DNA from: Fonticula alba ATCC 38817
Taxonomy: Eukaryota; Protista; Nucleariida
Strand: one strand, 5' to 3'
Length of the DNA stretch: 6,780 bases
Assembly: GCA_000388065.2 (NCBI GenBank)
Contig: KB932212.1
Shown here: piece after piece, positions 4,833-5,255 of the stretch
How positions within the stretch are numbered: position 1 is the stretch's first letter
How the letters are laid out: each line of letters opens with the position of its first letter
Made by a program: the position numbers and the translations under genes
The notes under the pieces: model-generated
Database searches by the model: none
What the model was told of the DNA's origin: nothing
Seen by the model: the letters and a program-made list of their open reading frames with translations, nothing else

Positions 4833-5255
4833 CTTGTTGCCACCTCCGCCGCCGGCGACTCCACCCTCTTCACCATGATGTCCCTGCCCTTCCGTAACAT
4901 GCCCCTGTCCCTGCGCGTGCGCTCCGAGGAGACCATCCCTCGCCACGTGGCCCCCTACACCTGCTTCGACACCGAGGCCACTTGCCTGGCTTCCACCAAC
5001 AACTGCTCTGGCCTGGCTGGCTGCCATATCCACAAGAAGGACGCCACTCGCGAGTGCTGGCGCTGCAACTGCGGCCCCTCCCACTCCGGGGACTCCTGCG
5101 AGTTCGTCGATGTGACCGTCTCCTTCGCCCTGGTGGCCACCGTTGTCGGCATCACCGTCGTTGCCCTGGTGGCCATCATCGTCACCATGCTCGGCATGGA
5201 CTCCGGCGATGACTCCATCATCCACCGCACCGCCTCCCACGCCAAGCACGCCTAA
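4833..5255 (+). CDS. ATP6AP2: ATP6AP2-like protein, last exon: 8-Cys module, transmembrane helix and cytosolic tail
   Basis: 140 aa ending in TAA at 5253-5255. It contains C-x6-C-x6-C-x5-C-x10-C-x2-C-x-C-x8-C, then the hydrophobic stretch FALVATVVGITVVALVAIIVTMLGM, then the tail MDSGDDSIIHRT, which matches the ATP6AP2 signature MDPGYDSIIYRM (Renin_r, PF07850). Confidence 0.88.
   Translation, partial: LVATSAAGDSTLFTMMSLPFRNMPLSLRVRSEETIPRHVAPYTCFDTEATCLASTNNCSGLAGCHIHKKDATRECWRCNCGPSHSGDSCEFVDVTVSFALVATVVGITVVALVAIIVTMLGMDSGDDSIIHRTASHAKHA

What the first reader, a model, noticed from the sequence alone, without database searches (positions are those of the whole stretch)
4962..5255. ATP6AP2 homolog carrying a fungal Vps3844/DUF3844-like 8-Cys module: a possible link between two families
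Seen in the sequence: the module CFDTEATCLASTNNCSGLAGCHIHKKDATRECWRCNCGPSHSGDSCEFVDVTVSF lies between an ATP6AP2-like luminal domain and an ATP6AP2-like transmembrane helix and tail. Established knowledge: human ATP6AP2 has no such Cys module there, whereas fungal DUF3844/Vps3844 proteins (PF12955) have an 8-Cys domain with a TNNCSG-like core and a D-V-S-x-x-F motif before a C-terminal transmembrane helix. Inference: this protein combines both architectures. Fungal Vps3844 proteins may therefore be diverged ATP6AP2 relatives, with animals having lost the Cys module.
Basis: partly seen in the sequence, partly recalled or inferred. Interest (0 to 1): 0.72.

Follow-up and report, generated by a model that had tools for sequence, protein, structure and literature searches.

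The report
Fonticula ATP6AP2 homologue with EGF-like module
This amoeba gene encodes its only relative of the proton-pump accessory protein ATP6AP2, carrying an extra cysteine-rich EGF-like module otherwise typical of uncharacterised fungal "Vps3844" proteins; together with related sequences it shows that those fungal proteins are diverged ATP6AP2 relatives, which I found in no paper searched.

Summary
Window 4962-5126 encodes an 8-cysteine module, followed in the same exon by a transmembrane helix and an ATP6AP2-type tail. That exon passes the Pfam gathering scores of both Vps3844_C (33 bits, cut-off 27) and Renin_r (28.9, cut-off 27.8).

Spliced transcript contigs join 54-517, 4391-4687 and 4833-5303 into one mRNA. 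The annotated protein H696_05561 is therefore N-terminally truncated.

The Fonticula genome has one locus for both families and no second ATP6AP2.

The family link is supported. A profile of 35 module-bearing proteins finds mammalian ATP6AP2 at E=2e-19 and skips the module. A fungal-only profile finds it at E=5e-12. A fungal structure model matches renin-receptor models (TM 0.52-0.60).

Limits:
- A Dikarya-only profile does not reach ATP6AP2; the link runs through Mucoromycota-type and environmental sequences.
- Fonticula's own luminal exons are not detectably ATP6AP2-like.
- The module is EGF-like.
- "Animals lost it" is not supported. A probable plant AP2 also seems to lack the module, so gain in the fungal lineage is more parsimonious.

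V-ATPase function is inferred, not shown. No paper in the library mentions the family or the link, although Pfam annotations already imply it.

The parts
54..517 (+). Internal coding exon: N-terminal luminal part. It starts two bases into a split codon, and the signal-peptide exon lies upstream of the window in a stretch that reads N.
   Evidence: Transcript contigs cover 54-517 and carry up to 142 further bases upstream. The 30 bases shown just before position 54 translate to a small-residue, signal-peptide-like A-x-A end. The joint 517>4391 is GT..AG. Pfam, hmmsearch and hhalign find no match for this exon alone.
518..4390 (+). 3873-base intron. It contains two assembly gaps (647-656, 3559-4371) and the nested Sec61-beta gene.
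   Evidence: The joint 517>4391 skips 3873 bases, GT..AG, in one contig in each of four runs.
4391..4687 (+). Coding exon, 99 codons: helical C-terminal part of the luminal domain.
   Evidence: Transcript contigs. Translation. AF2 helices with pLDDT 77-92. Relatives P0002 and P0003 align from annotated-protein residue 57-59 onward. Taken alone the similarity is weak (E=0.024).
4688..4832 (+). 145-base intron.
   Evidence: The joint 4687>4833 is GT..AG in all four runs.
4833..4961 (+). Start of the last coding exon: low-confidence linker of 43 residues.
   Evidence: AF2 pLDDT is below 50 for annotated-protein residues 122-141. This corresponds in position to the protease-sensitive linker of animal ATP6AP2 (inference).
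4962..5126 (+). Eight-Cys EGF-like juxtamembrane module ending in the D-V-T-V-S-F motif. This is the N-terminal half of Pfam Vps3844_C.
   Evidence: PF12955 scores 33 bits on the exon and 27.1 bits on the module alone. All eight Cys are at least 90% conserved in 35 relatives. pLDDT is 83-96. The family profile hits Notch, selectin and EGF domains at 1e-7 to 1e-5. Foldseek gives TM 0.57-0.60 to EGF domains.
5115..5198 (+). Single transmembrane helix, where the Vps3844_C and Renin_r matches overlap.
   Evidence: AF2 helix at annotated-protein residues 196-223, pLDDT 97-98. PF07850 covers profile positions 33-73. The family profile aligns this segment with ATP6AP2 residues 303-345.
5199..5255 (+). 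Cytosolic tail with an ATP6AP2-type motif (D-S-G-D-D-S-I-I-H-R), a Lys at -3, and the stop codon at 5253-5255.
   Evidence: BLASTP against Daphnia renin receptor-like protein gives E=1e-4 over helix plus tail. K at -3 is at least 90% conserved. Tail table.
5256..5303 (+). 3' untranslated region, minimum extent.
   Evidence: The longest transcript contig reaches 5303.

Best explanation
The gene is the single Fonticula alba member of one family that includes animal ATP6AP2 (the (pro)renin receptor), plant VHA-AP2 and the fungal 'Vps3844' proteins.

It encodes a type I membrane protein with these parts, in order:
- a signal peptide, encoded upstream of the window;
- a diverged luminal domain (exons 54-517 and 4391-4687);
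- a flexible linker;
- a disulfide-rich EGF-like module directly on the membrane;
- one transmembrane helix;
- a short cytosolic tail with the ATP6AP2-type D-x-G-x-D-S-I-I-[HY]-R motif and a Lys at -3.

The inferred mode of action is that of ATP6AP2. The protein would be inserted in the ER. Its helix would be enclosed in the c-ring of the V-ATPase Vo sector next to the Ac45/Voa1-type partner, which this genome also encodes. The tail would help to seat subunit d and to retrieve the protein to the ER.

The EGF-like module would sit at the luminal mouth of the c-ring, in place of the short animal juxtamembrane segment.

Shown here: gene structure, expression as one spliced mRNA, domain content, single copy, and homology at the level of the family. 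Inferred: topology, association with Vo, and the role of the module.
For: - Both Pfam families pass their cut-offs on one exon. The genome has one locus for both and no other RENR_N or Renin_r match.
- One spliced transcript spans all three exons.
- All 35 relatives analysed (of 36 hits in 1.84 billion representatives) carry the module. In Pfam scans at E<=0.01, all 35 match Vps3844_C, 14 RENR_N and 13 Renin_r.
- The family profile finds mammalian ATP6AP2 at E=2.4e-19 in two collinear stretches, lumen and helix plus tail, and skips the module.
- Narrower profiles also reach ATP6AP2: fungal-only at E=5e-12 and Mucoromycota-type at E=1.1e-7.
- The fold agrees: TM 0.52/0.57 and 0.48/0.60 to renin-receptor clusters.
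- A helix-plus-tail query hits nothing in the PDB sequences except ATP6AP2, eight of eight hits, though each is weak.
- An Ac45/Voa1 transmembrane-domain gene is present in the genome at 47.5 bits.
- ATP6AP2/AP2 sits inside the c-ring in mammals and plants (bioRxiv 10.64898/2026.07.01.735876). It acts in Vo assembly with a C-terminal retrieval motif (PMC6249795, PMC5716037).
Against: - The Renin_r score is only about 1 bit over the cut-off on the exon, and 0.2 bit under it on the annotated protein.
- Fonticula's luminal exons give no significant match to RENR_N or to the family profile.
- The tail has Lys at -3 only. This is not a canonical KKxx or KxKxx motif.
- No experiment ties any Vps3844-family protein to the V-ATPase in the papers searched.
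- Yeast V-ATPase works with Voa1 alone.
Confidence: 0.7

Rival explanations
1. The family is homologous to ATP6AP2, but in the fungal lineage it has taken another job, for example as a sorting receptor or membrane-protein chaperone of the vacuolar pathway. It would then not be a resident of the Vo c-ring.
For: - The source name 'vacuolar sorting protein'.
- Core fungi have replaced the ATP6AP2-type tail with other motifs (E-L-P-x-x-L, or K-S-G...) and no longer match Renin_r.
- Yeast V-ATPase has only Voa1 inside the ring (bioRxiv 10.64898/2026.07.01.735876).
- The added EGF-like module could be a new binding surface.
Against: - Fonticula and Rozella keep the ATP6AP2-type tail.
- The gene is single copy, with no other ATP6AP2 in the genome.
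- Vacuolar missorting is a known consequence of V-ATPase loss in yeast (established knowledge), so the name does not discriminate.
Confidence: 0.2
2. This is an unrelated EGF-domain membrane protein. The Renin_r hit would be noise from a hydrophobic helix, and the PF12955 hit would reflect a generic EGF domain.
For: - The Renin_r score is borderline.
- The module alone gives only E=0.67 to an EGF chimera in the PDB sequences.
- The Foldseek matches are weak, E>0.3.
Against: - The tail motif after the helix matches ATP6AP2 residue for residue: 7 of 11 identical to Daphnia.
- The only PDB hits of a relative's helix plus tail are ATP6AP2.
- The eight-Cys pattern, the T-x-x-C-S-G core and the D-x-S-x-x-F motif are conserved family-wide.
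- Relatives carry RENR_N above its cut-off on the same polypeptide.
Confidence: 0.07
3. This is an assembly or annotation chimera, with the exons coming from different genes joined across gaps in the scaffold.
For: - The scaffold has gaps at 647-656, 3559-4371 and 5422-5617.
- Another gene (Sec61-beta) lies between exon 1 and exon 2.
- The public model omits exon 1.
Against: - Single transcript contigs bridge 517>4391 and 4687>4833 with GT..AG ends in all four runs.
- Sec61-beta is a separate contig.
- The module, helix and tail lie in one uninterrupted exon.
Confidence: 0.03

Closest known systems
Animal ATP6AP2 / (pro)renin receptor (Pfam RENR_N PF25294 + Renin_r PF07850); plant VHA-AP2
   Same: - Type I layout.
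- The helix plus D-x-G-x-D-S-I-I-[YH]-R tail matches Renin_r.
- The juxtamembrane [DE]-x-S-x-x-F motif aligns with E-Y-S-V-V-F of human ATP6AP2.
- The family's luminal domain is homologous.
- Basic residue at -3 and mostly an acidic last residue.
   Different: - A module of about 46 residues with eight Cys is inserted between the linker and the helix, where animals have about 12-25 residues.
- Fonticula's luminal exons are too diverged to match RENR_N.
- There is no canonical dilysine motif.
- No furin-type site was examined.
Fungal Vps3844 / DUF3844 proteins (Pfam Vps3844_C PF12955, often with DUF6859 PF21656)
   Same: - The eight-Cys module with the T-x-x-C-S-G core, followed by D-x-S-x-x-F and the helix.
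- The same order of parts.
- Named relatives in Rozella, Blastocladiomycota, Mucoromycota, Basidiomycota and Ascomycota.
   Different: - The match stops at profile position 90 of 104. Fonticula has the ATP6AP2-type tail, not the E-L-P-x-x-L tail of Dikarya or the K-S-G tail of Mucoromycota.
- No DUF6859 match on exon 1.
EGF-like domains (Notch, selectin, EGF/TGF-alpha)
   Same: - The family profile hits them at 1e-7 to 1e-5.
- Model matches at TM 0.57-0.60 normalised to the EGF domain, rmsd 1.8-4.8.
- The spacing C-x-C-x8-C at the end is EGF-like.
   Different: - Eight Cys instead of six. By pattern, the first and fifth are the extra pair; this is an inference, because no model coordinates were available.
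- A single copy fused directly to a transmembrane helix.
- Not a repeat array.

Membership tests
ATP6AP2 / renin receptor family | Renin_r (PF07850) match on the transmembrane helix and cytosolic tail, above the gathering score | tested here: met
   28.9 bits against a cut-off of 27.8 on the exon. 29.5 bits in the genome scan. 27.6 bits on the annotated protein, just under the cut-off. BLASTP against Daphnia gives E=1e-4.
ATP6AP2 / renin receptor family | RENR_N (PF25294) luminal domain | tested here: not met
   No match for exon 1, exon 2 or P0001 at E<=10, and none in the genome at E<=1. hhalign gives E=0.024 at the collinear motif only. The feature is met for relatives: P0002 63.9 bits, P0003 63.3 bits, P0006 47.7 bits.
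ATP6AP2 / renin receptor family | Type I topology with an N-terminal signal peptide | tested here: inconclusive
   The 5' exon lies outside the window in a stretch that reads N. The transcript's last 30 upstream bases encode a small-residue A-x-A type end.
ATP6AP2 / renin receptor family | C-terminal ER-retrieval motif (KxRxx in vertebrates, KKxx in Drosophila; PMC5716037) | tested here: inconclusive
   The tail ends ...H-A-K-H-A, with Lys at -3 only. K at -3 is at least 90% conserved in the family, and many relatives also have R at -5.
ATP6AP2 / renin receptor family | Physical residence in the Vo c-ring, or a role in Vo assembly | not testable with these tools
   Only context is available: an Ac45/Voa1 transmembrane-domain gene is present in the genome.
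Vps3844 family (PF12955) | Vps3844_C match above the gathering score | tested here: met
   33 bits against a cut-off of 27, profile positions 1-90 of 104. 30.6 bits in the genome scan.
Vps3844 family (PF12955) | Eight conserved Cys, then D-x-S-x-x-F, then the helix | tested here: met
   C145, C152, C159, C165, C176, C179, C181, C190, D194 and F199 of P0001 are invariant or at least 90% conserved.
Vps3844 family (PF12955) | Fungal-type cytosolic tail (last 14 profile positions; E-L-P-x-x-L in Dikarya) | tested here: not met
   The match ends at profile position 90. The tail is ATP6AP2-type.
EGF-like domain | EGF disulfide core and fold | tested here: inconclusive
   At family level the profile hits EGF domains at E=1e-7. 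Fonticula alone gives E=0.67. Foldseek gives E>0.3 but TM 0.57-0.60 to EGF domains. Disulfide pairing was not checked.

The most novel reading that the evidence does not exclude
Vps3844 proteins are the unrecognised AP2 (ATP6AP2) subunit or assembly factor of fungal V-ATPases. They would be present from nucleariids and Rozella to Dikarya and missing in budding yeast. The membrane-proximal EGF-like module would be an innovation of the fungal (Holomycota) lineage, sitting at the luminal mouth of the c-ring. If so, the 'yeast-type' Vo with Voa1 alone is a derived exception, not the fungal rule.
Probability: 0.5. Interest if true: 0.7.

Novelty: new variant of a known kind. Interest (0 to 1): 0.55.

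Why it matters
ATP6AP2 is a human disease gene and a V-ATPase accessory subunit. It is stated to be absent from S. cerevisiae (PMC6249795), and yeast Vo holds only Voa1 in the ring (bioRxiv 10.64898/2026.07.01.735876).

If the widespread but uncharacterised fungal Vps3844 proteins are its orthologues, several things follow:
- AP2 biology becomes testable in tractable fungi such as Neurospora, Aspergillus, Cryptococcus and Mucor.
- Fungal V-ATPase composition needs another look.
- Four Pfam families (RENR_N and DUF6859; Renin_r and Vps3844_C) should be linked.

The link is already implicit in Pfam hits, so this is a clarification rather than a new kind of system.

Tried and rejected
- Word-index protein searches found only the query itself or close kin.
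- phmmer of the exon against PDB sequences gave nothing significant.
- Foldseek of both models against the PDB gave no match at E<=0.001, only weak EGF rows. The ATP6AP2 luminal domain was not recovered there.
- Exon 1 against the family gave no signal by Pfam, hmmsearch or hhalign.
- The Dikarya-only profile did not reach ATP6AP2.
- Atlas feature searches returned only fungal Vps3844 clusters, or nothing once these were skipped.
- Contigs of two unnamed relatives and cluster look-ups gave no taxon for the environmental sequences with ATP6AP2-type tails. The polarity of gain versus loss rests on a probable plant chain only.
- I could not display the sequence of PDB chain 36qu_r or confirm its organism.
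- Ten paper searches found no paper mentioning Vps3844, DUF3844 or PF12955, and none combining ATP6AP2 with filamentous fungi.
- Left out by rule: the full spliced protein (upstream exon + 54-517 + 4391-4687 + 4833-5252) was never joined, searched or folded. Exons were used one by one. The only joined form used was the database's own model P0001 (exons 2 and 3).

Full report
**What is in the window**

The window is G000:C12:47802-54581 of a 31.3-Mb, GC-rich eukaryotic assembly. The encoded protein is in public databases as H696_05561 of Fonticula alba, which agrees with an earlier scan note.

- a 43-residue linker;
- a 55-residue stretch with eight cysteines ending in D-V-T-V-S-F (4962-5126);
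- a hydrophobic helix (about 5115-5198);
- an 18-residue tail and the stop codon.

**Is it one gene?**

I laid the contigs of four small 2012 runs (two samples, one study) on window 1-5400.
- In each run a single contig covers 54-517, 4391-4687 and 4833-5245 or beyond (5303 in the longest). The joints 517>4391 (3873 bases skipped) and 4687>4833 (145 bases skipped) both have GT..AG ends.
- The contigs carry 69 to 142 further bases upstream of position 54.
- The runs are only guessed to be RNA, but intron-less joints with splice-site ends show they derive from spliced transcripts.
- A separate contig (727-805 joined to 901-1136) is Sec61-beta (Pfam 28.1 bits).

The public model P0001 (241 aa) holds only the last two exons behind an artificial 'MH' start, so it is N-terminally truncated. 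The signal-peptide exon lies upstream of the window, where the sequence reads N. The 30 upstream bases shown end in a small-residue A-x-A type sequence.

Exon 1 was searched alone, and the only joined form used is the database's own P0001.

**Domain content**

On the last exon, Vps3844_C (PF12955) scores 33 bits (cut-off 27) over residues 44-120, profile positions 1-90 of 104. Renin_r (PF07850) scores 28.9 bits (cut-off 27.8) over residues 95-135, profile 33-73 of 79. The two matches overlap on the helix, so the two Pfam models describe the same segment.

In the whole genome there is one locus for each family, this same exon. No RENR_N match exists anywhere. Fonticula therefore has one gene of this kind, not a Vps3844 gene beside a canonical ATP6AP2.

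An Ac45/Voa1-type transmembrane domain, the partner of ATP6AP2 in Vo, is encoded on contig 7 (47.5 bits).

**Relatives**

The word-index search found only the protein itself. I therefore ran the exhaustive HMMER search with P0001. It gave 36 proteins at E<=0.001 among 1.84 billion representatives.

I aligned 35 of them, leaving out P0034, a 673-residue protein with seven matched stretches. All 35 carry the module. The eight Cys, a Gly, the Asp and Phe of D-x-S-x-x-F and a Lys at -3 are invariant or at least 90% conserved.

In Pfam scans at E<=0.01, all 35 match Vps3844_C, 14 match RENR_N and 13 match Renin_r.

Named members are all from the fungal side of the opisthokonts:
- Rozella;
- Catenaria and Blastocladiella;
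- Dichotomocladium and Umbelopsis;
- Amylostereum, Mixia and a Tremellales species;
- Peziza and other Pezizomycetes, and Drechslerella.

All are annotated as hypothetical, EGF-like or 'Vps3844 C-terminal domain-containing'.

Three unnamed environmental proteins (P0002, P0003, P0006) match all three families. RENR_N scores 48-64 bits (cut-off 39.4). Vps3844_C scores 39-42 bits. Renin_r scores 31.7, 17.8 and 26.3 bits, so only P0002 clears its cut-off of 27.8. These are better 'missing links' than Fonticula itself.

**Tails**

The tail table shows two types.
- Fonticula, Rozella and about a dozen environmental proteins keep an ATP6AP2-type tail, [MIL]-D-x-G-x-D-[ST]-x-[ILV]-[YFH].
- Dikarya have G-E-E-L-P-x-x-L, Mucoromycota have K-S-G...L-P-K-Q-D, and Blastocladiomycota have Ala/Gly-rich tails.

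**Is the fungal family related to ATP6AP2?**

Profile searches against PDB sequences:
- The 35-sequence profile finds mammalian ATP6AP2 at E=2.4e-19 in two collinear stretches: lumen (profile 12-158 with residues 70-290) and helix plus tail (profile 215-257 with residues 303-345). The module columns are skipped. D-I-S-x-x-F aligns with E-Y-S-V-V-F.
- A profile of the 14 proteins with fungal-type tails (8 from named fungi, 6 unnamed) still finds ATP6AP2 at E=5e-12 over the luminal domain. hhalign against a single Daphnia ATP6AP2 gives 92% probability, E=6.5e-7.
- A five-sequence Mucoromycota-type profile gives E=1.1e-7.
- An eight-sequence Dikarya-only profile gives nothing at E<=1. It does match the Mucoromycota-type profile over the full length at 99.8% probability, E=1.5e-27.

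The homology is thus transitive, through early-diverging fungi and environmental sequences.

Structure agrees. An AlphaFold model of the Umbelopsis protein (pLDDT 77, pTM 0.65) matches ESM Atlas clusters of chordate renin receptor (TM 0.52/0.57, 253 residues, rmsd 4.0) and arthropod renin receptor-like proteins (TM 0.48/0.60). These scores are as good as its matches to fungal Vps3844 clusters.

**What is weak**

Fonticula's own luminal exons are not recognisably ATP6AP2-like.
- There is no RENR_N or DUF6859 hit.
- hmmsearch with a 22-sequence family profile gives 0.5 and -1.3 bits.
- hhalign gives E=0.024 at the right motif for exon 2 and nothing for exon 1.

In Fonticula it is the helix and tail that tie the protein to ATP6AP2. 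In core fungi it is the luminal domain. Only the family as a whole bridges both.

**What the module is**

It is EGF-like.
- The family profile hits Notch, selectin and EGF domains at 1e-7 to 1e-5.
- The models give TM 0.57-0.60 to EGF domains, at weak Foldseek E-values.
- The module is confidently modelled, pLDDT 83-96.

It has eight rather than six Cys. By spacing, the first and fifth form the extra pair. This is an inference, because no coordinates were available to me.

**Gain or loss?**

The Arabidopsis V-ATPase preprint (10.64898/2026.07.01.735876) shows that plants have an AP2 subunit inside the c-ring, so the family predates opisthokonts.

A PDB chain named 'V-type proton ATPase subunit AP2' (36qu_r, 364 residues) is probably that plant protein, although the tool does not show the organism. 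The 35-sequence profile matches it only in the lumen, up to residue 283, at 17.5 bits in total. Generic EGF domains score 20-35 bits with the same profile. The 81 residues that remain compare with 126-134 in module-bearing proteins.

With plants and animals both lacking the module, one gain in the fungal lineage is more parsimonious than two losses. This is provisional, because the environmental sequences have no taxon.

**Mechanism**

By homology, the protein should act like ATP6AP2. It would be a type I protein whose helix is enclosed in the Vo c-ring beside the Ac45/Voa1-type helix during assembly in the ER. Its tail would contribute to seating subunit d and to retrieval (PMC6249795, PMC5716037, and the preprint above). 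The rigid, disulfide-bonded module would replace the short, protease-sensitive juxtamembrane segment of animals at the luminal mouth of the ring.

None of this was tested. The main rival is a diverged function in vacuolar sorting.

**Novelty**

None of the ten searches of the held library found a paper that mentions Vps3844, DUF3844 or PF12955, or that combines ATP6AP2 with filamentous fungi. PMC6249795 states that ATP6AP2 does not exist in S. cerevisiae.

The databases already carry both Pfam labels on this protein. They also carry RENR_N on 11-12% of members of some fungal Vps3844 clusters. The link is therefore implicit but apparently unstated. I rate it a new variant of a known kind, of moderate interest.

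Noticed in passing
window 727-805 and 901-985 (+), transcript to at least 1136: A two-exon piece of a Sec61-beta gene lies on the same strand inside the 3.9-kb intron of the ATP6AP2-like gene. Its last exon matches Pfam Sec61_beta at 28.1 bits. Its transcript contig is separate and carries up to 76 further bases upstream of 727.
   Followed up: partly
window 54-517 and upstream; protein P0001: The public gene model H696_05561 (241 aa) is N-terminally truncated. It omits exon 54-517 and the upstream signal-peptide exon, and starts with 'MH' joined to the exon that begins at 4391.
   Followed up: yes
model of P0026 (Umbelopsis), residues about 62-295: The luminal domain of the Vps3844/ATP6AP2 family resembles the alkaline-phosphatase superfamily fold. 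49 of the 50 rows listed by the wide structural search are alkaline phosphatases, phosphoglycerate mutases, ENPPs, sulfatases, LtaS/MCR-1 or PglZ proteins, with Z up to 8.3. Bacterial phosphodiesterase clusters appear in the Atlas at TM 0.37-0.50. Z is in the range the tool calls common, so this is only a lead.
   Followed up: no
G000:C7:571025-571141 (-), locus L005: This is an Ac45/Voa1-type transmembrane domain (PF20520, 47.5 bits), the expected partner of ATP6AP2 in the Vo c-ring.
   Followed up: no
window 541-646, 1645-1668, 2097-2122, 2351-2380: CT-rich near-tandem repeats and long C or G homopolymer runs flank the assembly gaps. Transcript contigs break or make odd non-splice joints there, for example 1676>4694 with CG..GT ends. 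These are probably low-complexity artefacts.
   Followed up: no
proteins P0002, P0003, P0006 (environmental, about 1-kb transcript-like contigs): These unnamed proteins carry RENR_N, the eight-Cys module and an ATP6AP2-type tail together. Their source organisms are unknown and would decide whether the module was gained in Holomycota or lost in animals.
   Followed up: partly
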